The translations under genes and the position numbers were made by a program. From Octopus bimaculoides (taxonomy: Eukaryota): a stretch of DNA of 64,000 nucleotides. Position 1 is the first letter of the stretch; each line of letters starts with the position of its first letter. Positions 1 to 60,640 of the stretch are shown in pieces. The stretch covers positions 123,316,585-123,380,584 of the forward strand of contig NC_068984.1 in assembly GCF_001194135.2 (NCBI RefSeq). The letters run 5' to 3'. The notes under the pieces are model-generated. The model did no database searches. It was not told where the DNA came from and saw only the letters and a program-made list of their open reading frames with translations.

Positions 1-109
1 TGTGTTTTATATATATATCTATTTTTGTTTGTCTCTTGTCTTTGAAGAAGATAAAAAATAAAGAAAAGGTAAAAAAAAAAAATACAATACCACTTAATTT
101 ACAGTTATC

Positions 110-115
110 TTTATT
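110..115 (-). other. Candidate polyadenylation signal AATAAA of calmodulin 3' UTR
   Basis: tttatt on plus strand, about 380 nt past the stop. The 3' UTR may extend beyond the window. Confidence 0.35.
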
Positions 116-492
116 TGAATGAGATCTGATGGACCAGCATGGAAAAAGATAGCAAAGAGATTGGCTTGGCTGGAAGGCAGAAATTTTTTTTACATCTTTG
201 AAGGAAAGGAAAAATGAATTTGATATAGTGGAGTCTACAGAACTAGGTCAGAGAAAGTAGTCAGATGGGATAGGGACATAATTGGTGATCTTACAGCACC
301 ACTACCGGGAAGAGATAACTGTACAGACCATCCCAGGTACATCTTTTAATTGAATGTGCGACTAAATACAGGACCTTGAGCTGTACACATACAGAAATGA
401 GAGATGCCAGGATGAAACTGCAGTGTGAATAAACTTTAATTTGCTTGTAATAATAATAATAATATAATAATTATAATAATAATTCACCAGTT

Positions 493-1870
<1,378 letters not shown>

Positions 1871-2619
1871 GTCGGAATGTCGTGTTGCTAATGGTAAGGG
1901 TAGGATGTGAAAAAAGAGCAGGTAGCGGTGGGTAAGGCAAGCTAACAGAATTAGACAAGATCTAAAGTAACAATAAAGCAGCTGTAACCTCTCTAGTCAA
2001 ATAAAATCAATGGAAATAGCAGCAGCAGCAGTTGCAAATCAATAACCAGATGGGAATCGAACTATGTCACACAGCAGTACAGATCTTACTCTACTGACAC
2101 TGTCATCACCAACTGCAGATTGGGGAACTACTGAATATATAAATATATATACACACAGTTATATATATATAAGGGGCATGTGGTAGAGAGACAGAAAGGG
2201 CAAGTGGCAGAGAGGCAGAAGGGGCCAGAGACACGCACACACACTGGTGCAGTGGTGAAACGTCGGTGACGCAGTGTGTCGGCTGCTGTGATTATGCTAA
2301 GAGCATTAGATCGAATTAGATGCTGCAGTAATGAAGCAACAGAGGAGGGGGAAAGAAGCGGAAGGGAAAAATTAGATCATTGCGACAAGTGTTGAACCAG
2401 AATCGAACCAATAATCCATACGATATCAGCAACCATCACCAACACCTCCCTGTTAAGGTAATTGTGAGCAGTGCGACGTGATCCGGCAGTGAGTGCAGTA
2501 AATAACAGGTAGCTGTAAGAGCAGCTGGAAGGAGGATGAGGAAGAGGAGATATTAACATATGTTAATGTGGTCAGCGTTGCGTGTGTGTGTATGTGCGAG
2601 CGGCACAAGTGACACATAC

Positions 2620-2665
2620 CTCACACAAATGATATTACACTGACGAAACCAAACAAGTCACATAA
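2620..2665 (-). other. Candidate 46-nt cassette or 5' UTR exon of calmodulin
   Basis: Acceptor ttttctggttttgtcctag (ends 2666) and donor AG|GTATGT (2619-2614). Confidence 0.35.
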
Positions 2666-3079
2666 CTAGGACAAAACCAGAAAACCGATAAATACTTGTC
2701 AGTAACCCCCTTCCTATCTAAGTCCTTAACCCGAGGGGAGACAATGCATCATACAGAAAGGTTAGTAGCTTGTCACTCCACCAACACAATTACAATCGAG
2801 TGAAAGCGCCAAAATACAAGCCTCCCCGCCAATTCGTGTGTGAAACCAGAAACAAAAACGAAATAAAAACTAGTCTGCAGCCACCAGTGACCACTTGAAA
2901 TGAGCTCAACTGACCGACATTAAGGGTAATGGTGAGGTACGGTTTTGAAACCGGCTTTTTAACTGCTTGTTAAGTAGTCTAATTAAAAATTTCTACCAAC
3001 ATGCAACCGTCGCTTCAAGTGTAAAAGCTGGTGGTGCACACACAACCCTAGTGTTCATTTAATTAAATCTGACAAGAGA

Positions 3080-3260
3080 CACCCAACAAGGGTATTTCAA
3101 CATAGGCACTCAACCCTACCGCCTTAGAAAAAGACACTAGCTAGTGCTTTCGAAGATACATTATTGCTGGAAAGAATGATATGGCCACGGCTGGAATGCC
3201 TTTGGCTAGACGTAGGTCTTTGCTCGACCAAGACTGACTTGTGACCGATAGACATATCTA
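3080..3260 (+). mobile_element. SINE-like 3' fragment (related to 4775-4955)
   Basis: Shares ggtcatagctggaatgcctttg-type core with 4775-4955. Confidence 0.4.
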
Positions 3261-3420
3261 CCTTATAGATTTATTGCTCATAACTATATAGCTAACTCCA
3301 GCAAATCTTTTGCACAGCTATATTAGCAGTAGTAGTAACAGCAATGTATTTCGGCATTTACTTTTGAAGACGGAGGAAAAAAAAAAAAAAACCCCGAAAA
3401 GAAAAAAANNNNNNNNNNNN

Positions 3421-3461
<41 letters not shown>

Positions 3462-4774
3462 TATATATATATATTTATATATTCACACGCATACCACATA
3501 GTTACTAAATGTAGCCTGTGTATAGGGAAGTTAAGACATTTCTCAGAACGCAGAGAATGAAAGAGTCGCCTCAGTATATATATATATATGTATTTATAAA
3601 AGGAGGGAAACAAGTGAAATGCTAATAATATAACTATTAGGCATTCATTCCATGATGGAATCCAAAAAGTATGATACAATTTTACAAATATATTCTTTGC
3701 TCGAACAAAAAAAAAAAATACACAAGACGAACTAATCCTACACACACACAAAATGACGTTGAACAAAAGATTTAATAATTAAAATAACGTAATCTACACA
3801 TTGTAATAAATTAGTCACATTTTACAGGAAAGTTTTCTCATCGGGATTTTACATTTGAAACATGTTCGGCAACAGTTTTAGGTCTGATACGAAAACCTTA
3901 AAATAAAGTAGATGCATTTTATCTCAGTAAAAAAAAAAATATCTAGTTGAATGAAAGAATTTTGTCAAATGTTAATAAATTTGAGAAAAATCTGAAAAAA
4001 TTTATTGAAAATGTAAAAAAAATTTCCATTTAACAACCTGCACTTTAAGCGCGAAGTTTATATACATACATGTGTATGATTATATATATATATATATATA
4101 TAATATAATATATATACATATATATAAAATAATAGACAGTTTCTATGGATACAGTCATTGATAAATGAATGCATATTTTTGAAATGTAGACAAATTTCAG
4201 TAATCGAAGAGATGTTATCTCGAGAGAAAAGGACATTTTTGGGGAGGATTTATGACGGTTGTGGCGGATTTTAAAATAGACATTTTTTTTTTCTCCCACA
4301 CATATTTCTATAGAGACGGAGATATTTGCTAGACATTTAAATGCTAGACAGTCATATTCCCACTAGGTCTTCAACTGTAAAATAAGTGAAACCCAGCAAA
4401 TTATGTATGTATATATATTATATATATATATACATACATATATATAAAATGAAAATAATCCTATTAAATTTCTGCGGTTATAGAGATAGGAATTTAAATT
4501 CTTAGGATATCTAAAATGCGCATATCTATATATAAAATACAGATTTCAATCTGCTTACAATAGGCATTTTATTTTCATGTTAAAGCATATTCTGTGGCCT
4601 TTTTTAAACGCTTATAATCACATCTTTCATCACGCAACCGATTTCATGCGACTATATAACCAGACACACACACACATGTGACTAATATATATATAACCCA
4701 CACACCCTATGCATACAACTAAGTGCTTATACGAGCCATTGAGAGAGAGAGAGAGAGAGATAGAGAGAGCCACT

Positions 4775-4955
4775 TCGTGGTCATTCTAACGGCTAGAAAT
4801 AGCAGTCAAACCGCCCTCAAATCATAGGCAAACATCTCGAAAAAGAATACATCGGGCAATGTACTCTTACATGTATCTAGAAAGACAGGATGGTCATAGC
4901 TGGAATGTCTTTGATCATAAAGCCTGTCCAAACAGGGTTGACATGGGCTAAACAA
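4775..4955 (+). mobile_element. SINE-like 3' fragment
   Basis: gctagaaatagcag...ggatggtcatagctggaatgtctttgatcat...ggctaaacaac; homologous to 3080-3260. Confidence 0.45.
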
Positions 4956-6131
4956 CTCTCAAGTGCTACTCAGCCGGCTTTTATTACTGTCTATATAAGA
5001 CATACAAGAAACAAGATCAAACCCGTCTCCATTATTATTTCTTTTTGCTTTTTCCATTTTTAAGCCATTAGTAATACAAAATCTCTTATTCCATCTAAGT
5101 TAAAAAAAAAATGAAAAACTGCCACGGGAAGCCAGAATATAATATATATATATATTTCTATGTATATATAGCCTCAGTAATGGTGAGATTTTGAAAAGGA
5201 AGATGCGAGAACACATATGGTCGTGAAATGTATGGAAATGGAGGAATAGAAAGAGACATATATATGTATATATATATATGGATGCGAAGGATTTTATGTA
5301 AGTCTGTCGTTTATTGAACGAGGAATTTCATTTAAACAAATTGTTCCCATCCATTTTTTAAAAAGTGACATCTTGTTATTCAAGAAAAAAAAAANNNNNN
5401 NNNNNNNNNNNNNNNNNNNNNNNNNNNNNNNNNNNNNNNNNNNNNNNNNNNNNNNNNNNNNNNNNNNNNNNNNNNNNNNNNNNNNNNNNNNNNNNNNNNN
5501 NNNNNNNNNNNNNNNNNNNNNNNNNNNNNNNNNNNNNNNNNNNNNNNNNNNNNNNNNNNNNNNNNNNNNNNNNNNNNNNNNNNNNNNNNNNNNNNNNNNN
5601 NNNNNNNNNNNNNNNNNNNNNNNNNNNNNNNNNNNNNNNNNNNNNNNNNNNNNNNNNNNNNNNNNNNNNNNNNNNNNNNNNNNNNNNNNNNNNNNNNNNN
5701 NNNNNNNNNNNNNNNNNNNNNNNNNNNNNNNNNNNNNNNNNNNNNNNNNNNNNNNNNNNNNNNNNNNNNNNNNNNNNNNNNNNNNNNNNNNNNNNNNNNN
5801 NNNNNNNNNNNNNNNNNNNNNNNNNNNNNNNNNNNNNNNNNNNNTATATAAGTATTAGGGATAAAAACCCCAAATTACAGGTAAAAACTCAATTAAAATC
5901 AATTTATTAAAAATTAAAATTAAATTAATATTGGATTTTCATCGATGAGTTCATGAACCTTGGTTATTTTCTCTAATACTATATACACAGCAAGCTATAT
6001 GAGAATTTTATATCTGAGTATTTGAAATAAAATATGACAGTAAACTTGGAATATGTATAAATATCGAACTGATATATATATGGTGCACCAGCATGACCGC
6101 AGCCACTTGGCTGAAACACATAAATAAATAA

Positions 6132-6166
<35 letters not shown>

Positions 6167-6420
6167 CACACACAACATACATATTGTCATACAGGTTATA
6201 TTTTTGGAAATATATATATCGTATACATATATATATTATGCATATATATATAATATAGGTATTTTACTGATATCAAAAATGAAGATTGATAATATCTGAC
6301 ACATTATATACATTTTTACAATTACCTCACAATATAAAAAAGGAAAAAATTGCTCCGGTAGGTATACATAAATTCAGTCTGTCATTTTAAATAGCTGCTA
6401 CTGTACATATACGACATTCT

Positions 6421-6475
<55 letters not shown>

Positions 6476-7171
6476 CGTTTAAATAACTTAGCGTGTATAA
6501 GATGCCAAAATATTGAACACCATTTATTAATCACAAGTCCATTTACAATATGTATTTATCTTACAAAACATCCGACACATACAATATTATATATATATAA
6601 ATGTATAACAAGCAATAAGACATGGTTCGATCTCAGTTCATGGAACTCGATGGCCTTTTTTGTCACAGATTGGGTCTAATATTTCTTACATCTTATAAAG
6701 ACCATGATATTATATATATATATATACACACACATAATTAGCAATTTAGATATTAATAATACAGACAGATACAGGTATATATATATATATATAAGGTCTT
6801 GATGGGTTGAGAGAGAAGACATTGTTGAAATATGGAATCTCCCCGCCTCACTTTTTTATTGAAATAGGATTAAAGATATATTTATATACAGATATTATCC
6901 TTTATATATATCTATGAAAGATTAAGTTTTAGGTATGATGAATTCGTCTGAATGAAAAATTATTATATATTTTTTTCTTTCATCCATCAAAACGGTAACA
7001 AGAGAAAGAAGGGGGGGGGACAAGCAACAAGATGTCAGCAGACGATAACGAATATATATATATATATATATATATATTAATGTGTGTGTGTGTGTCAATT
7101 TGTATAAGAAATAATGGTTATTAGGCTTAAGAAATGATTGAAAAGAAGAGAATAAACAAGTGTCAACTTAC

Positions 7172-7174
7172 CAT
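7172..7174 (-). CDS. CaM: Candidate alternative (distal) calmodulin initiator exon end (ATG|GTAAGT)
   Basis: Plus strand reads acttaccat at 7166-7174: a perfect donor directly after ATG, in phase with exon 2, with a UTR-like GC-richer block upstream. Confidence 0.5.
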
Positions 7175-7322
7175 AGTGTTAATTATCAATGAAAAAAAAA
7201 AGGGGTATTTTGTAATAATAATAATAAGCCGGGTGTGAGGTGAGCAGTGGCTGGCTTCTTTTACTGTTGTAATGTAATATAAGAGTTAAGACAGCCGCCG
7301 TCCCTTAAACTGAACTGGTTAG

Positions 7323-7815
7323 AGAGAGTGAGAGTGTGCGAGAGAGATAGAGTGATAGATAGACTGGGAAGTGAGAGCGAGATACTAAAACTACAGAGAG
7401 AGTATGTGTGTGAGTAATGAAAGGAGGAGTAATAGTAAAATAGAGAGGGGTACTGATGAAAGCTATAGTGTGATAGAGAGTGTGTGTGAGGATAAATCGG
7501 AGAGAGTGAGAGTGTGCGAGAGAGACAGAGTGATAGATAGACTGGGAAGTGAGAGCGAGATACTAAAACCACAGAGAGAGTATGTGTATGAGTAATGAAA
7601 AGAGGAGTAACGGTGAAATAGAGAGGGGTACTGACGAAAGCTATAGTGCGANNNNNNNNNNTAGACTGGGAAGTGAGAGCGAGATACTAAAACTACAGAG
7701 AGAGTATGTGTATGAGTAATGAAAGGAGGAGTAACGGTGAAATAGAGAGGGGTACTGACGAAAGCTATAGTGCGATAGAGAGTGTGTGAGGATAAATCAG
7801 AGAGAGTGAGAGAGA
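7323..7815. repeat. GA-rich tandem repeat, ~178-bp unit, at least 3 copies (contains a short gap)
   Basis: agactgggaagtgagagcgagatactaaaac recurs at 7361, 7539 and 7663. Confidence 0.9.
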
Positions 7816-8256
7816 GAGTGTGTGTTACAGAGATAGTCGCAAAGGAGGAATGGTAACAGTTATAGTCTAACAGAAAGGGTGTGAATGTAATGCAGGAGGG
7901 AGATGAATAAAATAGAAGCAGAAAAGGAGGGGGAATAGAAATAGTAAGGGGAGGAAGTAAGAGTAAGTACTAGAGGGATAAAGGGAGTAGTAAAGAGGGA
8001 TAGAGATAGATAGGTAAAAGGTTGTAAAGGGAGGGAAAAATGGGTGTGCAAACTTTATTACAAAAGAAGGTACTACTAGTCTTAGTACGACTAGTAGTAG
8101 TAGTATTTACTATTTATTTTTCTCTCTATCTATAACCTGTTTTACACTGGCTTGCCTTACTATAGTATAATAGAGAGGGTTGTCTTTTATTTAAAAAAAA
8201 AAAAGATACAACTGGTAATATAGAGCTCGTAGGGGAATCTTGACTGTTGAATTTAC

Positions 8257-8298
8257 AAGATGGCGACAGCGGCGTTGTTGATGGTGACAAAATGGCGG
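8257..8298. promoter_or_regulatory. Twin YY1-type motifs (AAGATGGCG, AAAATGGCGG) next to a CTG/CAG run
   Basis: Motifs at 8257-8265 and 8289-8298 in a locally GC-rich island. Confidence 0.4.
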
Positions 8299-10071
8299 TG
8301 GTGGCTGCTGCTGTGTTGCTACATACTGTTGCTGCTGCTGCTGCTGTTGCTAGTGCTGGTACTGCGACGGTTGCTGCTGCTATTGTCAGTGTAACGCATT
8401 GATACTGACACACGTATATACACTCATCGATAAAGCCGCGTACATACTCACACACAACGCATACATTTACGTATTAAGCAAACACACCCATGCCTATACT
8501 GATACACACGCACACACATGTGTTCACACTGTTGATAGTGTGACATAATGGGTTATAGTGTAGGACAGCTAGAAGCTACGTCACATTCATAAAACACATA
8601 CATACATAGTCACACACATATGTACACGCGAAGTCCTCTTCCCATTACTCTTACTTTATTCTACCTACATTGAGGAGGAGGAGGAGGAAGGGGATTGTCT
8701 CTGAAGAGTTTGATCGCGGATGGACACGAGATAGACTAAGATAAAGACAAGAGAGAGAAAGAGAGAGAATTAAATTTAAGAGTTAGAAAGTAAACGGTGA
8801 CAACGATAGATGAAGCGTTAGCAAGGAGAGTAAAAGATTAAGACAAATAGACAGATACAAAAAAAGGAAAAGAGAATAAGGTAGATTAAATCGATGGAAT
8901 ACAAGAGAAGANNNNNNNNNNNNNNNNNNNNNNNNNNNNNNNNNNNNNNNNNNNNNNNNNNNNNNNNNNNNNNNNNNNNNNNNNNNNNNNNNNNNNNNNN
9001 NNNNNNNNNNNNNNNNNNNNNNNNNNNNNNNNNNNNNNNNNNNNNNNNNNNNNNNNNNNNGGAGTGAAGCTATCAATAAAGGGAGTGTCTTTAACTTTTA
9101 TGAGGCACACTGTCTTCACTATAACTATGTACGTGCTACATGTTATCCATGTATGTGTGTGACATTTTGTAAGTTTACATATGCATATGTATGTTATTTT
9201 CTGTGCGCGCGCGCACACACGTATATGTATGTATGTATGTATGTTCCTGTTGGTATAACCAAGCGTGTGTATGGTTCCCTGTATGTGTTTGTCTAAACAC
9301 ATATTTGACAACGTTACTTATATTCTATTAAACACATATACACACACACACACAGATACAACAAATATATTTTTGCCGGTATATAAGGGTGTGTGCTACA
9401 ATTTCAACATGTGTCCTCACACACACACACATACACACACACACACACACATATCTCCTTAAACACACACATTTATCACAAATATGTATACATATGTATT
9501 GTATATGTACATATATATATATCTATATATACATATACATATATATATCATGTCAAAGCTTGACTACATATGAAGAAACTATAAATGAATATGTATACAC
9601 ACATACACATATCTATATGTATGTGTGAATACATACATACACAGACACACATACATATAAATACACATACATACATATATATAAATACACACACATACAC
9701 ACATATATATACATATGCATACATTGCCGCAATATAATACACGTATGCTCAAATGTATTGGGTACTTATTACTGATGCAGTTGATATTCATCCGCGTTAT
9801 GGCTCCCTCCCCCAATTATCGATATCCCATTCCTGGCTGCTCTCTTTCTATTTCTATATTTATCTAGTTTATCTCTCTTCTACTCCTCTTTCTATATATT
9901 ACTATTTATCTATTTCGCTTTCAATGCTTTCCCTCCATTTTTACCCCCCGTCATGTAAACGATTTATTAAAATCCTGACTGCCATAAGAGAAAGACAAGA
10001 CAAAAAAATCGAATTGCAGGAAATTAGAGTAGATTTATGAAAAAAAAAAAAAAAAATAAATACGCACACAT

Positions 10072-10104
<33 letters not shown>

Positions 10105-10564
10105 TATTATTTTAATTTAGTTTTGTGATCGGAAGCTTGCTCTATATCACTTTCTTGGGTTTCAACTGAACAGAAGCCATTAAGAATCAGTAAATAACGA
10201 ATTTGCAGGTTTTTATTTCATACTGGAAAAAGAACACCTCCCCCCTTGTTATTCCTTCTCTCAATTTAATCGAACATTAAAAATAATAATAATATTGATC
10301 GATGATATAGCAATAGTGTTGATCATCATGATCAGAATCAACATTAATAGAATTAATAACGGCAATAATGATTATTATTACGAATATCATAATAAGCAAC
10401 CGTAATAGCGTCATTTGCAACGCGGCAAAGTGGACTATTTTTTGTTGCATTTAAAAAAAAACAAAAACATTTTTCTCTCTCTTTCTAATCCTTCATTTTT
10501 TCCTTCTTTCTATCGTTTCCCCTTAAATATTATCACTCTATCGTTTTTCTTTTTTGCTTCATCC

Positions 10565-10698
10565 ACTCACTATGTAGCTTTCTGTTTTTCTCTGTCTCAT
10601 TCTATTTACGCGCGTCAACGTTAGATGATGAAGAGAAAGAAAAAAGAAGAGATGAGAGAATTTGAAAAAAAAAAAGAATATGTATGCGTGTATGTACG

Positions 10699-10747
<49 letters not shown>

Positions 10748-10952
10748 AAATATCTATGTAATTGTATGCGTAAGTGTATAAAACAAGGTGTGCTGCGGTG
10801 CGTCTGCTCAGTGTTAGGGCGCCAACATTTATAACTGAAACCATAGCAACGACGTTTTTCATTGGTCAGTTCACACCTGCAATGCGACAGTAGTCGTCAC
10901 TGCAGCTACAACAGTGGAGCTTCTACTGCTACAGTGATGGCGGCATGTGAGT
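10565..10952. promoter_or_regulatory. Candidate bidirectional promoter with outward-facing splice donors
   Basis: Minus strand: CCAAT 10865-10861, TATAAAT 10833-10827, donor GTGAGT 10570-10565. Plus strand: TCAGTT 10866-10871, GATGGCGGC 10936-10944, donor GTGAGT 10947-10952. RFX-like half site CATAGCAAC at about 10842. Confidence 0.35.
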
Positions 10953-11811
10953 GTCTGTGCGTATGCGTGTGTGTGTTGGTGTATAGCTATATGTGAGAAT
11001 GAGTGCGTCAATATGTATGTATGTGTGTGCGTGTATGTGTGTCTGTGTGCGAATCGGCGTATATGAGGGCGGTTTATGTGATTTTTATGTATGTCTATGT
11101 GTATAACAATATGAATATATATATATGTATGTATATATATATATTTTCATATATGTAGTATACACGTATCTATACAATATATAGCTGCCTCACTTTTTCT
11201 CTATATACATAATTCTGTTACGTTGTTTCAAATACTCGAATCTTTATTCTTTCTTCTCTCCATCTCATATATATATATGTATATATGTATGTATATGTAC
11301 ATATATATACACATATATATATATACATATATACACATATATGTGTGAATGTATGTATGTGTGTGTATAAATATATACGGGTATGTGTATGCGTGTTATA
11401 TCCACGTGTGTAGCGGCGTATGTAGAGAGAAAAGGCGGCTATGGCTGCCAAACATTTAATACACCAAACGACAGCAAATCGACGACTTTTTCTTTCTCTT
11501 GATGGCTTTTTCAATCGGATGGATGGAGGAGACTCCACATTAATTCTCTTAATTACAGCACCACCAGCATTTTGGTGACTATTGTCTTGTCTTTTGTGTG
11601 AATGCATGTGTAGTGTGTGTGTGTGTATGTGTGTGTGTGTGTGTATGTGTGGTGTGTGTGTACGCGTGCATTTTATATATATATTATGTATAATATATGT
11701 ATACATTTCTTCGTATATTGTTTCCTTTACAACACTAGTAGAAACAATTTTGATGCATATATATAATATATATGTGTGTGCGCGTTCGCATTTGGTGATC
11801 TCTCTATCTGC

Positions 11812-11845
<34 letters not shown>

Positions 11846-12036
11846 ATCTATCTGTCTGTCTGATATCTTTATATATACTTCTATGCATGCATATCCATGC
11901 ACTAAACTCTTCAGAAATGTACAAGTATATGAATTATGTATGTATATATATATCACTACTTATCGCTCTCTTTCTCATATATACTCGCATTTTCGTCCAC
12001 ATACGTATACACTTAATTACACACAATATAAATGTT

Positions 12037-17049: not shown

Positions 17050-17952
17050 TTGCTTTTAAATTTTGGTGCAAGGTCAGCAATTATATTGACCCCAGTGCTC
17101 GACTGAGATATATTTTATCGATTCCGAGAGGACGAAAAGCAAAGTTGATCTCGGCGGAATTTGAACTCAGAACGTAATGAGTCGGAAAAAATAACTCTAA
17201 GCATTTTCTCCAACGCTCTAACGATTCTGCCAGTTCACTGCCTTAAATGGTTTTAAATTTCGGCTCAAGGCCAGCACTTTAAATGGGTAGGGCCAAGTCG
17301 ATTTCATCGACCCAATACTCAAATGATACTTATTTTATCGATCTTGTACGGGTGAAAGGCAAAATCAATCTCGGCGGAAATTGAACTCAGAGCGTAAAGA
17401 GCCGGTAGTAGTGGAGCTAAGAATTTGGTCCGACATGCTAATGACTCACCCAATTACTATAATCCTTTCTACTATAGGCACAAGGCTTGAAATTTTGTGG
17501 GAGGGGACTAGTCGATTATATCCATTCCAGCATTTAACTGGTATTTGCTTGATCGACCACGAAAGGATGAAAGGCAAATTCGACTTTGAACGTTCTGGGT
17601 TCAAATTCCGCCGAAGGCAAATTCGACTTCGGCGGAATTTGAACCCAGAACGTTCAAAGACGGACGAAATATCCTTTTCTACTCTTGGCACAAGGCCAGA
17701 AAAATTTTTTTTGGTGGGGGGAAGGAGCCAGTCGATTAGATCGACCCCAGTACACAACTGGTACTTAATTTATCGACCCTGAAAGGATGAAAGGCAAAGT
17801 CGACCTCGGCGGAATTTGAACTCAGAACGTGACCCTGAAAGGATGAAAGGCAAAGTCGACCTCGGCGGAATTTGAACTCAGAACGTAAAGACAGACGAAA
17901 TACCGCTAAGCATTTCACCTGATGTGCTAACGATTCCGCCAACTCGCCACCT
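17050..17952 (-). mobile_element. Cluster of four head-to-tail SINE family B copies
   Basis: Repeated gaaaggcaaagtcgacctcggcggaatttgaactcagaacg core (Meta/Sauria-like domain on the minus strand). Confidence 0.85.
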
Positions 17953-21664: not shown

Positions 21665-21880
21665 ATAATTTTTAATTTCCACATACGGTCAACAATTTTG
21701 AATAGAGGGTATTAGTAGATGTCATCGATTTCAGTACTTCTATTGTACTTTATTTTAACGATCCTGAAGGGATGAAAGGCAAAGTTGACATCGGCGGAAT
21801 ATGAACTCAGAACGTAAAAGTCGAAAAAGAAATACTGCAAAGCATTTTGTCGGACGTTCTATCGGTTCGGCCAGCTCGCC
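21665..21880 (-). mobile_element. SINE family B inserted in the hAT relic
   Basis: Family B core and head. Confidence 0.8.
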
Positions 21881-22312
21881 GCTCTTTTCAGCTTTCAGAA
21901 TAACAGAAGAGTTTCAAAGAGACATAATTGTCAAGAAACATCATTCTTCTCTCCAGCTTCAATAAAAGAATAAATACATTCCTTGACACTGAAATAGAAA
22001 ACCCCAAACAGGAAGACTGTGAAGATAAAACAGAAGGCCTGCATGATAACTTCCTAACTAGGTTTGATGGCTTACAGAAGTCGAAAAATCCTTCCTTCTA
22101 ATTTCATTCAAAGATAATTATAATTATCCGATTCTTGAAGCTCTTGTTTTAAAATCCTCTGTTGTAGAAATAAAGCTAATGGAATTGCAAGAGAACCTGG
22201 GTCTAAAGATAATACATAAATCTTAATTTAAAACTGAGCTCTCGAAAGAAGTTCTAGGAATGAAATATCGCGAATTGGAGAAAACTGGTGTGTAACACAC
22301 CATTTGACCTCT

Positions 22313-22620
22313 TACCTTTTACTTGTTTCTGTCATTTGGCTGCGACCATGCTGGGACACCACTTTGAAGGGTTTTAGTCTAACGAATCGACCTCAGTATT
22401 TATTTTTTTAAAGCCTGGTACTTATTCTATCAGACTCTTTTGCCGAATTGCTTAGTTAGGGGGGAACTAAACAGACTAACACCGGTGTTCAAGCGGTGGT
22501 GGAGAACAAACACAGATGCATAAATAAATATATATAATATGACGGGCTTCTTTCAGTTTCCATCAACCAATTCCACTCACAAGGCTTTGGTCGACCCCAG
22601 GCTATAGTAGAAGACGCCCA
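22313..22620 (-). mobile_element. SINE family D (5' truncated)
   Basis: Tail cttgtttc.gtcatttg.ctgcg.ccatgctgg plus head segment aagggc..ctttcagtttcc. Confidence 0.8.
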
Positions 22621-22769
22621 CCCAAGCTCGGAGCTAATTCGCACAGCCTTGGGTCGGAAGTGCGAGGGTGGAGGAGACAGATGACCAACTACTTCTGAGA
22701 AAAAAGAGGCCATAATAGTAGTGGTAGAAAAGATTCTTAATAGAAGTTCATAATGTTTGTAGTGCCAAA

Positions 22770-23390
22770 GGCGGTGACTGAGCAGAGTCATTAAAACGCT
22801 GAGCAAAAGGGTTAGCGGCAGCTTGCCCCTCTTTATGTTCTAAGTTCAAATTCCTCCGCGTTCGACTTTGCCTTTCATCCTTTCGAGGTCGATAAAATAA
22901 CTACCAGTGAAGCACTCTCTATGGCACTCCGTCGCTTACGACGTTGAGGGTTCCAGTTGATCCGATCAACGGAACAGCCTGCTCGTGAAATTAACGTGCA
23001 AGTGGCTGAGCACTCCACAGACACGTGTACTCTTAACGTAGTTCTCGGGGATATTCAGCGTGACACAGAGTGACAAGGCTGACCCTTTGAATTACAGGCA
23101 CAACAGAAACAGGAAGTAAGAGTGAGAGAAAGTTGTGGTGGAAGAGTACAGCAGGGTTCGCCACCATCCCCTGCCGGAGCCTCGTGGAGCTTTAGGTGTT
23201 TTCGCTCAATAAACATTCACAACGCCCGGTCTGGGAATCGAAACCGCGATCCTATGACCGCGAGTCCGCTGCCCTAACCACTGGGCCATTGCGCCTCCAC
23301 CAGTCAAGCACTACGGTTGATGTAACCAACTTAGTCCCCGCCCACAAACCTGCTGGCCTTATGCCAAAGTTTAAAGCCAATATTTGTAAT
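22770..23390 (+). mobile_element. SINE family B split by a family A insertion
   Basis: B sequence stops at 22916 and resumes at 23301. Confidence 0.75.
22922..23300 (-). mobile_element. Young SINE family A (~380 bp)
   Basis: tRNA-like head gtggaggcgcaatggcccagtggttagggc; TSD cagt(g/c)aagcact at 22905-22916 and 23301-23312; near-identical to the copies at 42633 and 53684. Confidence 0.92.
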
Positions 23391-23404
23391 GTCTACAATC
23401 ATTA

Positions 23405-23625
23405 GCACGTTGGGCAAACTGTTTAGCAGCATTTCTTCTGGCTTTACGTTCTGAGTTCAAATTCCGCCAGGGTTGACTTTGACTTTTTTCCTTTCGAGGT
23501 CGATAAAATGAGTACTATTTGAATACTGGGGTCGATAAAATAAGTACCAGTTGAGCACTGGGTCAATGTAATCGTTTAGCCCTGTTTCCTCTAAATGTCA
23601 GGCTTTGTGCTTATTCTAAAAAGAA
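23405..23625 (+). mobile_element. SINE family B
   Basis: ttacgttctgagttcaaattccgcc...gtcgataaaat core. Confidence 0.8.
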
Positions 23626-24716: not shown

Positions 24717-24837
24717 TGTATGTATGTATGTATGTATTATGTATGTTTACATGATGTCTCCACCGAAATGTGTATACACACCTTAACAGCTGATAACTAC
24801 CTTTTCATTTCTTTTAAAATTTAAACCATAATATATA

Positions 24838-25045
24838 ATGGTTTCAAATTTTGGCTCAAGGCCAGAAATTTTGGGGATGGGGTTAAGTCGAATAAATCGA
24901 CCCCAGTGCTCAACTGGTACTTATTTTATCGACTCCGAAAGGATGAGAGACAAAGTCAATCCAGGCGTCATTTTAACGCAGAATATAAAGACGAACGAAG
25001 GCATTTTTCCTGGTGTGCTAACGATTCTGCCAGCTCGCCGCCTTA
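24838..25045 (-). mobile_element. SINE family B
   Basis: Family core and ccagctcgcc head. Confidence 0.8.
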
Positions 25046-31960: not shown

Positions 31961-32751
31961 TAGAATAGGTGCACTGTACAACAAACTAAATGGTTCTTGG
32001 TGGCATTGTTGTATTTAGTAAATAGTCCAGTTCAAGGAAGTTTCCTATATTTTAGCTTGCTTGATACTCCCTTAACAGAGAAGGAAAATAATAACCAGCA
32101 TAATAGACCGCTTCTTACAAATTAACATGAACACCAGACAATTTCATTATACTTTAACAGATACAACCCTATTTCAGTCATTTTTCTTCATACATTTACG
32201 TATGATATACTTCTGATCTTCCTGTGAAAACATGTGGCCTTGTGGTTTAGGTTTTCGGTATACGATCATAAGATCGTGGGTTCAGTTCCTAGACTGAGGG
32301 GCGTGTTGTGTCCTTGAGCAAGGCACTTAATTTATCGTTGCTCTAGTCTATTTAGATTTAAATGAGAACCAGCCGGGTACTGGTGCCACCCACTCTGCCT
32401 CCTGCTGTCACGTCCTGGATTTTCACTGAATAAAGGTTGACAAAATCAAAAGAGCATCTAAGTCCACTCGCGATTACATCAGCGCCCAAAAACAATTGTC
32501 GAAGTCATAGTACATGCTACTAAATCTGGTCGCATGGTTGTAGTGTCTCTGTATTTGAACTTACAGCTTGTCTTGTTCTATTTCTCAGATACACAGTTCT
32601 TAACGGACGAATTTAAATATATTTTGAGGTATTGATAATGTCGAAAAAAGGAAAACGTTCTCTTTATTGCTAGGATGAATTGTATGTTTAGAATTTTGTT
32701 TTGGAAGAAGTAGCATTTATTTTCATTATAAAAACTTACGCATATATTATA

Positions 32752-32961
32752 ACTCTTTACTCTTTTACTTGTTTCAGTCATTTGACTGCGGCCATGCTGG
32801 AGCACCGCCTTTAGTCGAGGAAATCGACCCCGGGACTTATTCTTTGTAAGCCTAGTACTTATTCTATCGCTCTCTTTTGCCGAACCGCTAAGTGACGGGG
32901 ACATAAACACACCAGCATCGGTTGTCAAGCAATGCTAAGGGGGACAAACACAGACACACAA

Positions 32962-33004
<43 letters not shown>

Positions 33005-33173
33005 CATATATACGACGGGCTTCTTTCAGTTTCCGTCTACAAATCCACTCACAAGGCTTTGGTCGGCCCGGGGCTATAGTAGAAGACACTTACCCAAGGT
33101 GCCACGCAGTGGGACAGAACCCGGGACCATGTGGTTGGTTAGCAAGCTACTTACCACACAGCCACTCCTGCAC
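32752..33173 (-). mobile_element. Full-length SINE family D with internal (CA)/(TA) microsatellite
   Basis: Head gtggctgtgtggtaag, microsatellite, then tail ending gactgaaacaagtaaaaga. Confidence 0.9.
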
Positions 33174-33452
33174 CTATAAATTAATTCAAATTTTAATCAA
33201 TCAAGCCTTTCTATGCATTGAGAAAGATAGAGGTAAATATTGGAGTCATGCTTAAATCAGTTTAAGGGCAGTTAGGAGCAAAGCTCTTGACTGTAGGATT
33301 TGATCTCAGAACGTATAATGAACTGGAAGAAACCCTGCAAATCATTTCTTCCACACTCTAACGATTCTATCAGCTAATTATATTGGGTTATCAGATAAAT
33401 TCGTTCGTCCCCACCGCCATGTTAATCCTTTCCAATATTATTTGACCTGCCG

Positions 33453-43018: not shown

Positions 43019-44564
43019 ACAACGAAGTTCACAACCACATAAAAATACACGCCAAATGTAAAAGCACCTAATGTTATTTTCAACAAGCAAGTCCATCAAC
43101 TCTCACAGTGTCCCTTCCTTTATTCTCAAGCCAGGTTTCACAGAACTCCCATCCGCGCCATAATATTTTCCCCATGATTTCATACTTTATGAAAAAGCAA
43201 CTTTTTTCAGCTCGCCAACTTTCACCCATTGTTCTCTCATTTCCAACATCTCAAAGGTGATAGATACAGTCATTAACATTATATCCTCCAACGCCTTGAA
43301 TCCATCTCCTTCGTTGGTCGTCAATACGGTGCAGTCTACAGGAGGCTTGTTTTCTGCTATCTCATTCACCAGTGGGCTCTTCTCCGTCTCTCTTCACGGA
43401 CACACACACACACACACATACGTGCGCACGCAATCACACACATACACACACACACACACACACAAACACAAACACACACAGAGTTATGTATACCATGTTT
43501 CTTCTTCTTCTTCTTCTTCTCCTCCTCCTCCTTCTCCCTTTCCTTATTTGTCTCCTCCTCCTTCTCTTCATCCCTCTTCTTCTCCTCCTCTTTCTCCCCC
43601 CTTCTTCTCCTCCTCTTTCTCCCCCCTTTCTTCTCCTCCTCTTTCTCCCCCTCCCCCTTTTCGAGTTTACTTACAACAGCTATAGTGGAACAAAACAGCT
43701 GATGTGTATACAAGATATCGGAATAGCATGTTTAACCAGTTGGTTAAACACGGTCTCTCATTATTAACGTGTGAATTATTGTTTCAGCAAAAACTCTTTT
43801 AAGAGAGAGAGAGGAATATCTCACATACGACAATCACAGTGAGATAAGTGAAAGTGACCAATAAATCAAGAAAAGTGAATATAAAATATAAAACAAAGCG
43901 AGGTGAGATATGGTTAAATAAAACAAATATCAGTACGAGGTGATATGAAAGCGGTTGCAGTATGCATATCATTTTGGCGGGTGGGGTACTTATGTGTAGG
44001 AGATACATGTGAGAGGGGAATGACTTAGAGACTATATCCTTTTGATTGGGTGTTTATTAAAAATTAGTAAAGTGGTAGTAATTAAATAAATTATTGATCG
44101 AAAAGATGATTAAATAATAAATCACTAAACGTATAAATTCAACAGTAAATAATTTAAACGAAATAATCGATAGTCGAGCAAATACTTAGTTGCATTATTA
44201 AATTATTGGCTAATGATTAATAATCGATCGATAAACAAAACAGGGATAAAGTAGGACATATCAAGACAATACGTGACAAAGTAGTGATATATGATATGGA
44301 TATATTATATCGAGTGAACACGCGTTGGAGGTGGATGTGATTAGTGAGTATCCGGAAGACAAGAGAAAGATATACGGTGTTTCATGATGTTACATGATGT
44401 TACATGATGTGGCATGATGTTACATGATGTTACAAATTTTCATTGCAGCAGCATTCAGAATTCATATTTTATAAAATTTTATTTTATTATTTTAATATTT
44501 TTTTTTGTACTTGTTCCACCACTTTGAAGATTTTAGACGAATGAATCGAATCCGGTTCTTATTT

Positions 44565-44676
44565 TTGAAGTCTGGTACTTATACTATTGGTCACTATTGT
44601 AGAACTGCTAAGTTACGAGGACATAAACAAACCAACACCATATGTCAAACGGTGGTGGGGGACAGACACAACACAG

Positions 44677-44712
<36 letters not shown>

Positions 44713-44952
44713 GCATATACATTACATACATACATGCATGCAAGCATACATACATACATAATACATACATACATACATACATATGCAATGGGTTTTCTCA
44801 CAGTTTCCGTCTACCAAATTTTGTTAAAAAGCATTAGTCGGCTCGGGGATATAGCGAAAAATACTTGCCCATGGTGCAGTATGGTGCAGTACAGTGGAAC
44901 AAAACTCAGAAACACATGGTTGTAAAGTGAACTTTTTAATCACACAGCCATG
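44565..44952 (-). mobile_element. SINE family D with internal microsatellites
   Basis: Head and tail of family D separated by (CA)n and (TACA)n. Confidence 0.8.
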
Positions 44953-45775: not shown

Positions 45776-46140
45776 ACTATTAAGCTTCGAAGATATTTTC
45801 CCTCTCACAAGTAATTCTCAAATAGGTATCTCAAACACTTAATATTATTCAGCTACATCTCACATTCACATTATTATATTATCTTATTTTACCTCTTCTT
45901 ATCCTCAAGTATTCAGCATTTCATAATTATTTAGATAATTCATTGACCACTTCCCCTTACCTATTATTGATTCTGATCTGAAAGTTACCAATCCTTCTCT
46001 GAGGATTTTGATGAATTATAAAATATTTCACACTTTAATGATGCATTTAACCAATGAGATGCATGTGTTCTGCAGTCTTGTATACATAATACATACATAC
46101 ATACGTACATACATACACACACACATACACATATTTATAG

Positions 46141-46304
46141 GCACAGGCATGGCTGTGTGGTAAGAAGTTTGCTTACCAACCACATGGTTCCCAGTTCAGT
46201 CCCACTGCGTCGCACCTTGGGTGAGTGTCTTTTTCTATAGCCTCGGGCCGACTAAAGCCTTAGGAGTGGATTTGGTAGACGGAAACTGGAAGAAGCCTGT
46301 TGTA

Positions 46305-46341
<37 letters not shown>

Positions 46342-46702
46342 GAGTGGCTGTGTGGTAAGTACCTTGTTTATCAACCACATAGTTCCGGGTTCAGTCCCAC
46401 TGCGTGGCATCTTGGGCAAGTGTCTCCTACTATAGCCTCGGGCCGACCAAATCCTTGTGAGTGGATTTTGTAGACGGAAACTGAAGGAAGCCCGTCGTAT
46501 ATATGCGTGTGTGTGTGTATTTTTGTGTCTGTGTCTGACAACTGATTCTGGTGTGTTTACATCCTTGTAACTTATAGGTTCGGCAAAAGAGACCGATAGA
46601 ATAAGTACTAGGCATCCAAAGAATAAATCCTGGGGTCGATGTGCTCGACTAAAGGCGGTGCTCCAGCATGGCTGCAGTCAAATGACTGAAACAAGTAAAA
46701 GA
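46141..46702 (+). mobile_element. SINE family D with duplicated head (46141-46295 and 46342-46500)
   Basis: Two ggctgtgtggtaag heads, each followed by (TA)n, then one tail. Confidence 0.85.
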
Positions 46703-46823
46703 GTACATGTATAATGCGCATCTACGCACGTACTTAGACACACACATACACATACACACACACACAGACACACATACACGCACGTATATACGTATGCATG
46801 TCACTACTCAGAGAATATAATCA

Positions 46824-48280: not shown

Positions 48281-49107
48281 TGTTCTATAAGCGTCTATCG
48301 CTATAATCCATAGACGTACAGATGTCACTTTATAGTGATCGCATTTGTGAGCCCATCTACTGAAAGTCGTATGGCCATGCATGAGTCGCGAGCTGTGCTG
48401 GTACAACCAGTTGGAAGTGCACAGTTACAAAATCTGCGCATAGGTGGCGGGTGTATAATTCTAACATCGTTGTTGTGTCTTCATGTGGTGGGGATCAACT
48501 CTGGTGAAAATTCTTGTGACCGAGCAGACCTTTTTAGGAAGAGCGCTGTTCCCCAGATCATTGATAACAAGGAAGCACAGAAAGGCGACAATCAATAATT
48601 GCATTGTTCAGTAGCTCAGTGGTTAGAGCGTCAGGCTTACAATCGTGCGGTTGTAAGTTCGATTCCAGGACCGGGCCTAGTGTTATGTTCTTGAGCAAGA
48701 CACTTTATTTCACTTTGCTTCAGTTCATTCAGCTGTAGAAATGATTTTTGACGTCACTGGTGCCAAGCTGGATCGGCGTTTCCCTTTCCCTTGGATAGCA
48801 TCGGTAGCATGTGCGCGCGCGCGCGTTTGAGCGCGTGCGTGTGCTTGTATGTGTGTATGTATGTGTGTGTGTGCGTGTGTTTGTGTGTCTCTGTTTGTCA
48901 CCCCACGGTCACTTCACAACCGATGTCCCCTCAACTTAGCAGTTTAGCAAAAGAGACCCATAGAATAAATACTAGGCTTACAAAGAATACGTCCTGGGGT
49001 CGATTTGTTCAACTAAAGGCGCTGCTCCAGCATGGCTGCAATCAAATGACTGAAGCACGTAAAAGAATAAAAGAATGTATATATATGTAAGAAATCGAAG
49101 GCGCTTT

Positions 49108-53456: not shown

Positions 53457-53655
53457 ACTGCGAGCTGGTAGAATCGTTAGCATGCCGAACAAAATGCTTT
53501 GCAGTATTTTTTCTGGCTTTACGTTCTGAGTTCAAATTCTGCTGAAGTCGACTTTGCTTTTGATCCTTTCGGGATCGATAAAATAAGTACCAATTGAGGA
53601 TTAGGGTCAATGTAATCAACTAGCCCTCTCCCTCAAAATTTCAGGTCTTGTACCT
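53457..53655 (+). mobile_element. SINE family B
   Basis: gcgagctggtagaatcgttag head plus core. Confidence 0.82.
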
Positions 53656-56627: not shown

Positions 56628-56842
56628 AGATTTCAAATTATGGCACAAAGCCAGTAGTTTCGGGGGCAGGTGTAAGTAGATTACACCGACTCCACTGATC
56701 AACTGGTACTTATATCTATCGATCCCTAAAGGATGAAAAGTAAAGTCGGCCTCGGCGGAATTTGAACTTAGATCGTAAAGACGGACGAAATGCTGCTAGG
56801 CATTTTTCCCGGTGTGCTAACGACTCTGCCAGCTCGCCACCT
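56628..56842 (-). mobile_element. SINE family B
   Basis: Family core and head. Confidence 0.82.
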
Positions 56843-60444: not shown

Positions 60445-60640
60445 ATTAGTTTCAAATTTTGGTACAAGGCCAACAATTTCGGGGGAAGGAGTAAATCAAT
60501 TACATTGACCTAAGTGTTCAACTAGTACTTATTTTATCGACCCCGAAAGGAGGAAAGGCAAAGTCGACGCCTGTGGCATTTGAACCCGAAGCATTTTGTC
60601 TGGAGTGCTAGCAGCAATTCTGCCTGCTCACCGCCTTCAG
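60445..60640 (-). mobile_element. SINE family B (internally deleted)
   Basis: Family core. Confidence 0.75.

What the first reader, a model, noticed from the sequence alone, without database searches (positions are those of the whole stretch)
1868..7174. Calmodulin may have two alternative ATG-only initiator exons
Seen: ATG|GTAAGG at 1870-1868 and ATG|GTAAGT at 7174-7172 can each splice in frame to exon 2 and give an identical protein. Known: calmodulin intron 1 falls right after the ATG, and vertebrates diversify CaM regulation through three genes encoding the same protein. Inference: one gene here may achieve the same through alternative promoters and 5' UTRs, for example neural versus ubiquitous.
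Basis: partly seen in the sequence, partly recalled or inferred. Interest (0 to 1): 0.7.

Follow-up and report, generated by a model that had tools for sequence, protein, structure and literature searches.

The report
Calmodulin start exon, doubtful second copy
This is an ordinary five-exon calmodulin gene whose ATG-only first exon sits 175 bases upstream of exon 2. The second "ATG plus splice donor" motif 5.5 kb further up is about as frequent as chance allows and has no independent support as an alternative start exon.

Summary
Either one, joined to exon 2 (1692-1662), gives the same 149-aa invertebrate-type calmodulin.

The proximal one is very probably the real exon 1:
- Such a motif within 300 nt of exon 2 has a chance probability of about 1e-4.
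- The 235 nt upstream contain no ATG (P=0.008).
- A TATA-like box and an Inr-like TCAGTA lie about 260 nt upstream.
- The CpG-depleted, gene-body-like zone (o/e 0.33-0.37) ends at about 2140.

The distal one rests on the motif alone:
- Chance gives it in 7.5-11% of shuffles of the intervening 5.3 kb, and about 1.3 copies per strand of the whole window.
- Its ATG-free upstream run is explained by G-poor composition.
- The would-be 5.5-kb intron has background CpG content (o/e 0.82 against 0.83), unlike the real introns.

Both assembly gaps fall inside that would-be intron, so reading frame is not at issue. Only the placement of the 1.8-kb contig carrying the motif is.

No transcript or orthologue data could be reached, so alternative use is unproven and, in my estimate, unlikely (about 0.2). 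Interest is low.

The parts
1..492 (-). 3' UTR of the calmodulin gene, at least partly. AATAAA starts at 115 and ATTAAA at 440 and 350 (minus-strand coordinates). It may run off the window.
   Evidence: CpG o/e is 0.17.
493..521 (-). Exon 5 coding part ([12 protein letters not shown] stop)
   Evidence: acceptor ttatttcag|AGTTCG
632..874 (-). Exon 4 (GNGTIDF...QVNYE)
   Evidence: acceptor tttcag|GAAATG, donor ATGAAG|gtgagt
1031..1174 (-). Exon 3 (EFKEAF...VDADG). Its donor CTGATG|gtaagc is the third minus-strand ATGGTAAG in the window.
1662..1692 (-). Exon 2 ([10 protein letters not shown] + first base of E), the common acceptor exon
   Evidence: acceptor ctttcttag|GCTGAT, donor TTGCTG|gtaagt
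1693..1867 (-). Intron 1 for the proximal first exon (175 nt). It contains a long T run, is GT...AG, and has no assembly gap.
   Evidence: Its size is in keeping with introns 2-4 (487, 156, 110 nt).
1868..1870 (-). Proximal initiator ATG, last three bases of exon 1 (donor ATG|GTAAGG). Best-supported real start exon.
   Evidence: Chance of ATGGTRAG within 300 nt of exon 2 is about 1e-4.
1871..2132 (-). Putative 5' UTR of the proximal exon 1 (5' end inferred, not shown). It is ATG-free from 1871 to 2103. A 6-codon uORF ATG lies at 2106-2104.
   Evidence: 0 ATG observed against 3.98 expected in 235 nt, P=0.008. CpG o/e 0.35. uORF MTVSVE*.
2129..2167 (-). TATA-like TATATATAA (2167-2159), followed about 30 nt later by Inr-like TCAGTA (2134-2129). 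Candidate core promoter; consensus match only.
   Evidence: Only 2 distinct loci with this pairing on the minus strand of the 64-kb window.
2141..3408 (-). GC-richer block (0.40-0.48), unique in the window, upstream of the proximal exon. Probable promoter or regulatory region.
   Evidence: GC; no repeats; CpG o/e 0.68
3409..3420 (.). Assembly gap (12 N) between an A/T run and an (AT)n microsatellite
5395..5844 (.). Assembly gap (450 N, estimated length). Continuity across it is untested.
7172..7174 (-). Distal candidate initiator ATG (ATG|GTAAGT, -3 A, +4 G). Unverified, and compatible with chance.
   Evidence: It is the only ATG|GT upstream of exon 2 that matches GTRAGT fully.
7322..7812 (.). 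178-bp tandem repeat (about 3 copies), CT-rich on the minus strand, just upstream of the distal ATG. It spans the 10-N gap 7652-7661.

Best explanation
The window holds one compact, canonical five-exon calmodulin gene on the minus strand. Its real first exon is the proximal one. Transcription is inferred to start near 2130, the 5' UTR runs to the ATG at 1870-1868, and a 175-nt phase-0 intron is spliced out to exon 2 at 1692.

The distal ATG|GTAAGT at 7174-7172 is most likely a fortuitous match in AT-rich, microsatellite-laden upstream DNA. It is probably not a regularly used alternative first exon.

Shown here: the exon structure, the protein, the motif statistics and the composition patterns. 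Inferred: the transcription start, and non-use of the distal site.
For: (1) Exon structure and protein. The 450-nt CDS gives a 149-aa calmodulin with GT/AG at every junction. It is 100% identical to many invertebrate calmodulins. The layout matches abalone and sea-squirt genes: 5 exons, exon 1 is ATG only (PMC6171432).

(2) Proximal motif. P is about 1e-4 for ATGGTRAG within 300 nt upstream of exon 2.

(3) Upstream ATGs. There are 235 ATG-free nt upstream of the proximal ATG where 3.98 are expected, P=0.008. Only 1.7% of ATG-to-ATG spacings on this strand are that long.

(4) Core promoter. A TATA-like box and an Inr-like TCAGTA with canonical spacing lie at 2167-2129. This is one of only two such loci on the minus strand.

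(5) CpG observed/expected by region:
- introns 2-4: 0.37
- 3' UTR: 0.17
- 1868-2140: 0.35
- 2141-3408: 0.68
- 3421-7171: 0.82
- rest of the window: 0.83
The 53 CpGs in 3421-7171 match the background rate (P=0.50) and are far above the rate of the real introns (P=2.5e-7). Octopus bimaculoides shows gene-body methylation of highly and constitutively expressed genes (PMC9476566). That would produce exactly this depletion over the transcribed unit.

(6) Distal motif. P(at least 1)=0.075-0.107 in the intervening 5.3 kb. The window-wide count is 4 against 2.62 expected. Its ATG-free upstream run is expected from composition, P(0)=0.24-0.53. There is no TATA at -30 of its single Inr-like TCAGTT. It shows no similarity to the proximal exon flank.

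(7) Intron sizes. The other introns are 110-487 nt, so a 175-nt intron 1 fits this compact gene.
Against: - No RNA evidence of any kind was obtainable, so non-use of the distal donor is an inference.
- The distal site is a perfect GTAAGT donor with a good start context (A at -3, G at +4). It lies at a composition boundary, in sequence that is unique within the window.
- An alternative first exon of this gene would have to end in ATG, which this one does.
- Mollusc calmodulin first introns of 2 to >13 kb are documented, so a 5.5-kb intron is not unusual.
- The CpG argument bears only on transcription in the germline and assumes the source species methylates gene bodies as O. bimaculoides does. 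A promoter used only in somatic tissue, such as neural tissue, would leave no CpG trace.
- The CpG count in the 273-nt putative UTR is small (4 against 11.3).
Confidence: 0.7

Rival explanations
1. Both ATG-only exons are real, mutually exclusive first exons driven by separate promoters. They give the same protein from mRNAs with different 5' UTRs, for example a ubiquitous proximal promoter and a tissue-restricted distal one.
For: Both motifs are present and both splice in frame. The distal donor is the only full GTRAGT match among 44 ATG|GT sites upstream of exon 2. It has a good start context, no upstream ATG, and an Inr-like TCAGTT 143 nt upstream. Its surrounding sequence is unique in the window. 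Long first introns are known in mollusc calmodulin genes.
Against: The motif is within chance expectation. The ATG-free run is explained by G-poor composition. There is no TATA-plus-Inr pairing. CpG content across the would-be intron is at background, unlike the real introns. The carrying contig is bounded by gaps, so its placement is unverified. No transcript or orthologue support was found, though those searches were not able to give a meaningful negative.
Confidence: 0.22
2. The distal exon is the main or only first exon, and the proximal ATG|GTAAGG is a chance motif inside a 5.5-kb first intron.
For: Long first introns are typical of mollusc calmodulin genes. The proximal putative 5' UTR is itself CpG-depleted (o/e 0.35), as expected for sequence inside a methylated gene body instead of at an unmethylated promoter.
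Against: The chance of the proximal motif so close to exon 2 is about 1e-4. There is significant ATG depletion upstream of it (P=0.008). CpG across 3421-7171 is at background. In octopus, one class of highly expressed genes is methylated across the promoter as well (PMC9476566), so a CpG-poor UTR does not argue against a start site there.
Confidence: 0.02
3. The 5' end of the gene differs from both proposals. Three versions are possible: a further first exon hidden in the 450-N gap or further upstream; a non-coding upstream exon spliced into the proximal 5' UTR; or a misplaced distal contig (5845-7651), so that the distal motif does not lie upstream of this gene at all.
For: About 460 bases in gaps are unread within the interval. 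The contig with the distal motif is only 1.8 kb and is bounded by gaps on both sides. AG dinucleotides preceded by pyrimidine runs exist upstream of the proximal ATG (read, not scored).
Against: Nothing positive points to such an exon. The tandem repeat continues in the same orientation across the 7652-7661 gap. Gaps flanked by homopolymers or microsatellites are ordinary assembly breaks.
Confidence: 0.06

Closest known systems
Mollusc and tunicate canonical calmodulin genes (abalone CaM A-D, sea squirt; PMC6171432)
   Same: [quoted passage not shown] There is no intron within the long fourth exon. All junctions are GT/AG. The protein is 149 aa.
   Different: Intron 1 here is only 175 nt for the proximal exon, against about 2 to >13 kb in abalone. 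The inferred 5' UTR is about 260 nt, against 64-89 nt in abalone, but the start site here is only inferred.
Vertebrate CALM1/2/3: three genes encoding one identical protein (established knowledge; recalled, not tested here)
   Same: Exon 1 ends with the ATG. Regulatory diversity is achieved without changing the protein.
   Different: In vertebrates the diversity comes from separate genes with different promoters and UTRs. Here only one gene is visible in the window, and a second promoter is unproven.
Genes with alternative 5' first exons spliced to a common exon 2, e.g. human CASR exons 1A/1B (PMC5020072)
   Different: In CASR the AUG lies in the shared exon 2, so any upstream exon will do. 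Here exon 2 has no ATG, so each alternative first exon would need its own ATG exactly at the donor. That is a stricter requirement, and the distal motif meets it, but at a frequency chance also provides.

Membership tests
Canonical metazoan calmodulin gene (five-exon mollusc/tunicate type) | Encodes a 149-aa calmodulin | tested here: met
   The spliced CDS translates to a 149-aa calmodulin. It is 100% identical over its full length to many invertebrate calmodulin entries carrying the EF-hand Pfam families.
Canonical metazoan calmodulin gene (five-exon mollusc/tunicate type) | First exon contributes only the ATG; phase-0 intron directly after it | tested here: met
   ATG|GTAAGG at 1870-1868 and the exon 2 acceptor at 1692. 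Chance P is about 1e-4. The family feature is as described in PMC6171432.
Canonical metazoan calmodulin gene (five-exon mollusc/tunicate type) | Five exons and four GT/AG introns, none inside the long fourth exon | tested here: met
   Exons 1692-1662, 1174-1031, 874-632 and 521-493, plus exon 1. All junctions are GT/AG.
Gene with alternative first exons / alternative promoters | Transcripts exist that join each first exon to the common exon 2 | not testable with these tools
   No transcript data for the source species could be reached. Window ORFs were not on record. There was no match in the metagenome collection or in paper full text. The exact look-up also failed for human calmodulin, so its negatives are uninformative.
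Gene with alternative first exons / alternative promoters | The second exon's ATG-donor motif occurs more often than chance would place it | tested here: not met
   P(at least 1)=0.075 for ATGGTAAG and 0.107 for ATGGTRAG in the 5.3-kb interval. There are 4 in the window against 2.62 expected.
Gene with alternative first exons / alternative promoters | Independent promoter or UTR signatures at the second exon (ATG depletion beyond composition, core-promoter pair) | tested here: not met
   The ATG-free run is expected from composition, P(0)=0.24-0.53. There is an Inr-like TCAGTT but no TATA at -30. These are consensus matches only and make a weak test.
Gene with alternative first exons / alternative promoters | Sequence between the two exons behaves as transcribed gene body (CpG depletion like the other introns) | tested here: not met
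   CpG o/e is 0.82 in 3421-7171, against 0.37 in introns 2-4 and 0.83 in the background. This is informative only for germline-active transcription.
Gene with alternative first exons / alternative promoters | Conservation of the second exon in orthologous loci | not testable with these tools
   No cephalopod genome or transcriptome is among the searchable collections. A protein search with the exon-4 open frame returned no cephalopod genomic ORF.

The most novel reading that the evidence does not exclude
The distal ATG|GTAAGT at 7174-7172 is a genuine, tissue-restricted (for example neural or embryonic) alternative first exon with its own promoter next to the 178-bp CT-rich tandem repeat. A single cephalopod calmodulin gene would then produce one protein from mRNAs with two different 5' UTRs. 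This would be a one-gene counterpart of the vertebrate three-gene arrangement.
Probability: 0.2. Interest if true: 0.35.

Novelty: already known. Interest (0 to 1): 0.12.

Why it matters
If the distal exon were real, it would show how an animal can diversify calmodulin regulation from one gene through alternative promoters and 5' UTRs. It would also be an unusual case in which each alternative first exon must carry its own ATG at the splice donor. Alternative first exons are nevertheless very common in animal genes, so even then it would be a modest, gene-specific annotation point.

As things stand, the useful result is practical. The proximal ATG-only exon, which gene predictors easily miss (a point made in PMC6171432), can be annotated with good confidence. 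The distal motif should not be annotated without RNA evidence.

Tried and rejected

(2) Look-ups of window ORFs that might have been called on transcript or genomic contigs of the same species were all not on record. These were the 3' UTR ORF 235-342, the exon-4 ORFs 546-845 and 546-839, the promoter/UTR ORFs 2377-2559, 2106-2240 and 2064-2186, and the distal-upstream ORF 7261-7572.

(3) I looked for in-frame 5' UTR read-through among the N-terminally extended calmodulins in the big protein database. None resembles the in-frame translation of either candidate UTR. Neither UTR has an in-frame ATG or GTG. Only the distal one has a TTG, which would give MIINTMADQ.... That sequence was not found.

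(4) Exact-sequence look-ups also returned "not in the collection" for human calmodulin. I therefore treat all of these negatives, including, as uninformative.

(5) A protein search with the exon-4 stop-to-stop frame, including its intron-derived tails, was meant to pull related cephalopod genomic contigs. It returned only ordinary calmodulins.

(6) An exact 44-mer across the exon 2-3 junction found nothing in JGI metagenome contigs. Junction strings found nothing in paper full text.

(7) Duplication or transposon origin of the distal exon is rejected. Self-BLAST shows no similarity between the two exon flanks and no other copy in the window, apart from microsatellites.

(8) Rfam found nothing in 1-12000.

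(9) Pfam found nothing in ten long ORFs upstream, so no neighbouring protein-coding gene was recognised in 9-64 kb.

(10) I did not compute a weight-matrix splice score. Only matches to the GTRAGT consensus were counted.
Full report
**What is there.** The low-coordinate end of the window carries a calmodulin gene on the minus strand. I fixed the exon coordinates by exact string matching and translation.
- Exon 2 is 1692-1662, exon 3 is 1174-1031, exon 4 is 874-632, and the coding part of exon 5 is 521-493 with a TAG stop.
- All junctions are GT/AG with good pyrimidine tracts.
- With an ATG in front, the 450-nt CDS gives the 149-aa protein MADQLTEEQ...TMMTSK.
- That protein is 100% identical over its full length to many invertebrate calmodulins in the large protein database.
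- The layout is the one described for abalone and sea-squirt calmodulin genes: five exons, a first exon contributing only the ATG, and no intron in the long fourth exon (PMC6171432).

**Checking the observation.** Because the intron follows a whole codon, either one joined to exon 2 gives the same protein.

**The gap question raised by the scan program.**
- The proximal join (1868 to 1692) contains no N.
- The distal join crosses 3409-3420 (12 N) and 5395-5844 (450 N). Both would lie inside the intron, so reading frame cannot be disturbed.
- The open issue is placement. The distal motif sits on a 1.8-kb contig (5845-7651) with gaps on both sides.
- The 178-bp tandem repeat at 7322-7812 continues in the same orientation across the 7652-7661 gap. 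This ties the contig to its upstream neighbour.
- Nothing ties it across the 450-N gap to the gene.
- The gaps at 3409-3420 and 5395-5844 abut homopolymer or (AT)n runs, as ordinary assembly breaks do.

**Is it more than chance?**
- ATGGTAAG occurs four times in the window on both strands, against 2.62 expected; 29 of 100 shuffles give at least four.
- On the minus strand the three copies are the two candidates plus the genuine exon-3 donor at 1033.
- Dinucleotide-preserving shuffles of the 5.3 kb between the candidates give at least one ATGGTAAG in 7.5% of trials, and ATGGTRAG in 10.7%.
- Over the whole 62 kb upstream, roughly one copy per strand is expected, so finding one somewhere upstream is unremarkable.
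- In contrast, ATGGTRAG within 300 nt upstream of exon 2 arises in about 1 in 10,000 shuffles.
- The proximal motif is therefore far beyond chance, and the distal one is not.

**Independent signatures at the proximal exon.**
- *Upstream ATGs.* The 235 nt upstream of the proximal ATG contain no ATG where 3.98 are expected (P=0.008). Only 1.7% of ATG-to-ATG spacings on this strand are that long. The next ATG, at 2106-2104, opens a six-codon uORF.
- *Core promoter.* TATATATAA at 2167-2159 is followed at canonical distance by TCAGTA at 2134-2129. Only two distinct loci on the minus strand of the window show such a pairing. This is a consensus match in a genome full of (TA)n, so I treat it as a hint for a start near 2130 and nothing more.
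- *Composition.* Upstream lies a 1.3-kb GC-richer block (0.40-0.48) that is unique in the window.
- *Intron size.* The 175-nt intron fits a compact gene whose other introns are 487, 156 and 110 nt.

**The same tests at the distal exon.**
- The nearest upstream ATG is 1150 nt away. However, the minus strand there is CT-rich and G-poor.
- Shuffles give zero ATGs in 24-53% of trials for 100-477 nt, so this is not evidence of a UTR.
- There is an Inr-like TCAGTT at 7318-7313 but no TATA about 30 nt upstream of it.
- Self-BLAST finds no similarity between the flanks of the two candidates. It also finds no other copy of either in the window beyond microsatellites. The distal motif is therefore neither a duplicated exon nor part of a recognisable interspersed repeat.
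- Rfam finds nothing in 1-12000.

**CpG pattern.** Observed/expected CpG by region:

| Region | CpG o/e |
|---|---|
| 3' UTR | 0.17 |
| Introns 2-4 | 0.37 |
| Coding exons | 0.45 |
| 1868-2140 | 0.35 |
| GC block 2141-3408 | 0.68 |
| 3421-7171 (would-be distal intron) | 0.82 |
| Remaining 55 kb | 0.83 |

- TpG+CpA is in excess in the depleted parts.
- The 53 CpGs in 3421-7171 fit the background rate (P=0.50). They are far more than the rate of the real introns would give (P=2.5e-7).
- In Octopus bimaculoides, highly and constitutively expressed genes carry gene-body methylation, in one class including the promoter (PMC9476566). Methylated CpGs decay over evolutionary time.
- My inference is that the habitually transcribed unit ends near 2140 and does not extend to 7174.

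Caveats on this inference:
- The species is not known to me.
- The signal reflects germline methylation only.
- A promoter active only in somatic tissues would leave no such trace.
- The count in the short UTR is small (4 against 11.3).

**Attempts to obtain decisive evidence.** Junction reads, 5' ends or orthologous loci would settle the matter, but I could not reach any.
- The contig index refuses spliced proteins.
- Seven window ORFs chosen to tag transcripts or genomic contigs of the same species were not on record.
- N-terminally extended calmodulin ORFs in the database, which are translated 5' UTRs, do not match either candidate UTR.
- A search with the exon-4 open frame plus intron tails gave no cephalopod contig.
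- An exact exon 2-3 junction 44-mer is absent from the metagenome collection, and junction strings are absent from paper full text.
- The exact-sequence look-up also denied the presence of human calmodulin. Its negatives therefore carry no weight.

**Conclusion.** The proximal ATG-only exon is real with high confidence (about 0.9 or more) and is simply the known calmodulin gene architecture.

The distal motif is a legitimate candidate in form: a perfect GTAAGT donor, A at -3, G at +4, and the obligatory ATG at the exon end. It has no support beyond the motif itself, it occurs at a chance-compatible rate, and the CpG evidence argues against habitual transcription through the would-be intron. 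I put the probability that it is a genuinely used alternative first exon at about 0.2.

Even if true, it would be one more case of alternative promoter use, which is very common. Interest is therefore low. The practical outcome is a confident annotation of exon 1 and a flagged, testable candidate.

Noticed in passing
window 1-2140 against 3421-64000: The calmodulin transcription unit is strongly CpG-depleted (o/e 0.17-0.45, with TpG+CpA excess) relative to the rest of the window (0.83). The boundary lies near 2140-2250. This is consistent with a methylated gene body in a constitutively expressed gene.
   Followed up: partly
window 32741-33181, 46133-46705, 48848-49087, 22312-22626, 44532-44877: An interspersed repeat family of about 250-400 bp, with copies 70-87% identical on both strands. 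The motif GACGGGCTTCTTTCAGTT at 22529 and 32993 belongs to it. It was not classified.
   Followed up: partly
window 17080-17902, with copies near 21718-21818, 22829-22908, 23319-23574, 24834-24991, 53471-53632, 56662-56790, 60450-60585: A second, more abundant short repeat family with an internal inverted repeat (17581-17662 matches its own reverse complement at 93%). It was not classified.
   Followed up: no
window 1-9000: No copy of either interspersed repeat family lies within about 9 kb of the gene, in contrast to 17-64 kb. Only microsatellites and the 178-bp tandem repeat occur there. This could reflect constraint on calmodulin regulatory DNA, or chance.
   Followed up: no
window 1817-1846 (intron 1 of the proximal exon): An uninterrupted T run of about 35 nt on the minus strand inside the 175-nt first intron. 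This is unusually long for such a short intron, and its length may be unreliable in a short-read assembly.
   Followed up: no
window 9001-64000: Ten of the longest ORFs upstream of the gene have no Pfam match, and most long ORFs are microsatellite translations. No neighbouring protein-coding gene was recognised in the 55 kb upstream.
   Followed up: partly
tool behaviour (not sequence): The exact-sequence cluster look-up reported that human calmodulin and the invertebrate calmodulin are not in the collection. Yet many 100%-identical extended versions are listed by the homology search. Negatives from that look-up should not be trusted for this family.
   Followed up: yes
proteins P0029-P0056: Many database 'calmodulins' of 190-240 aa are the normal protein followed by ...TSKW plus translated 3' UTR. 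That is, a TGA stop was read as Trp by the gene caller. Others carry translated 5' UTRs. These are gene-calling artefacts and not isoforms.
   Followed up: partly
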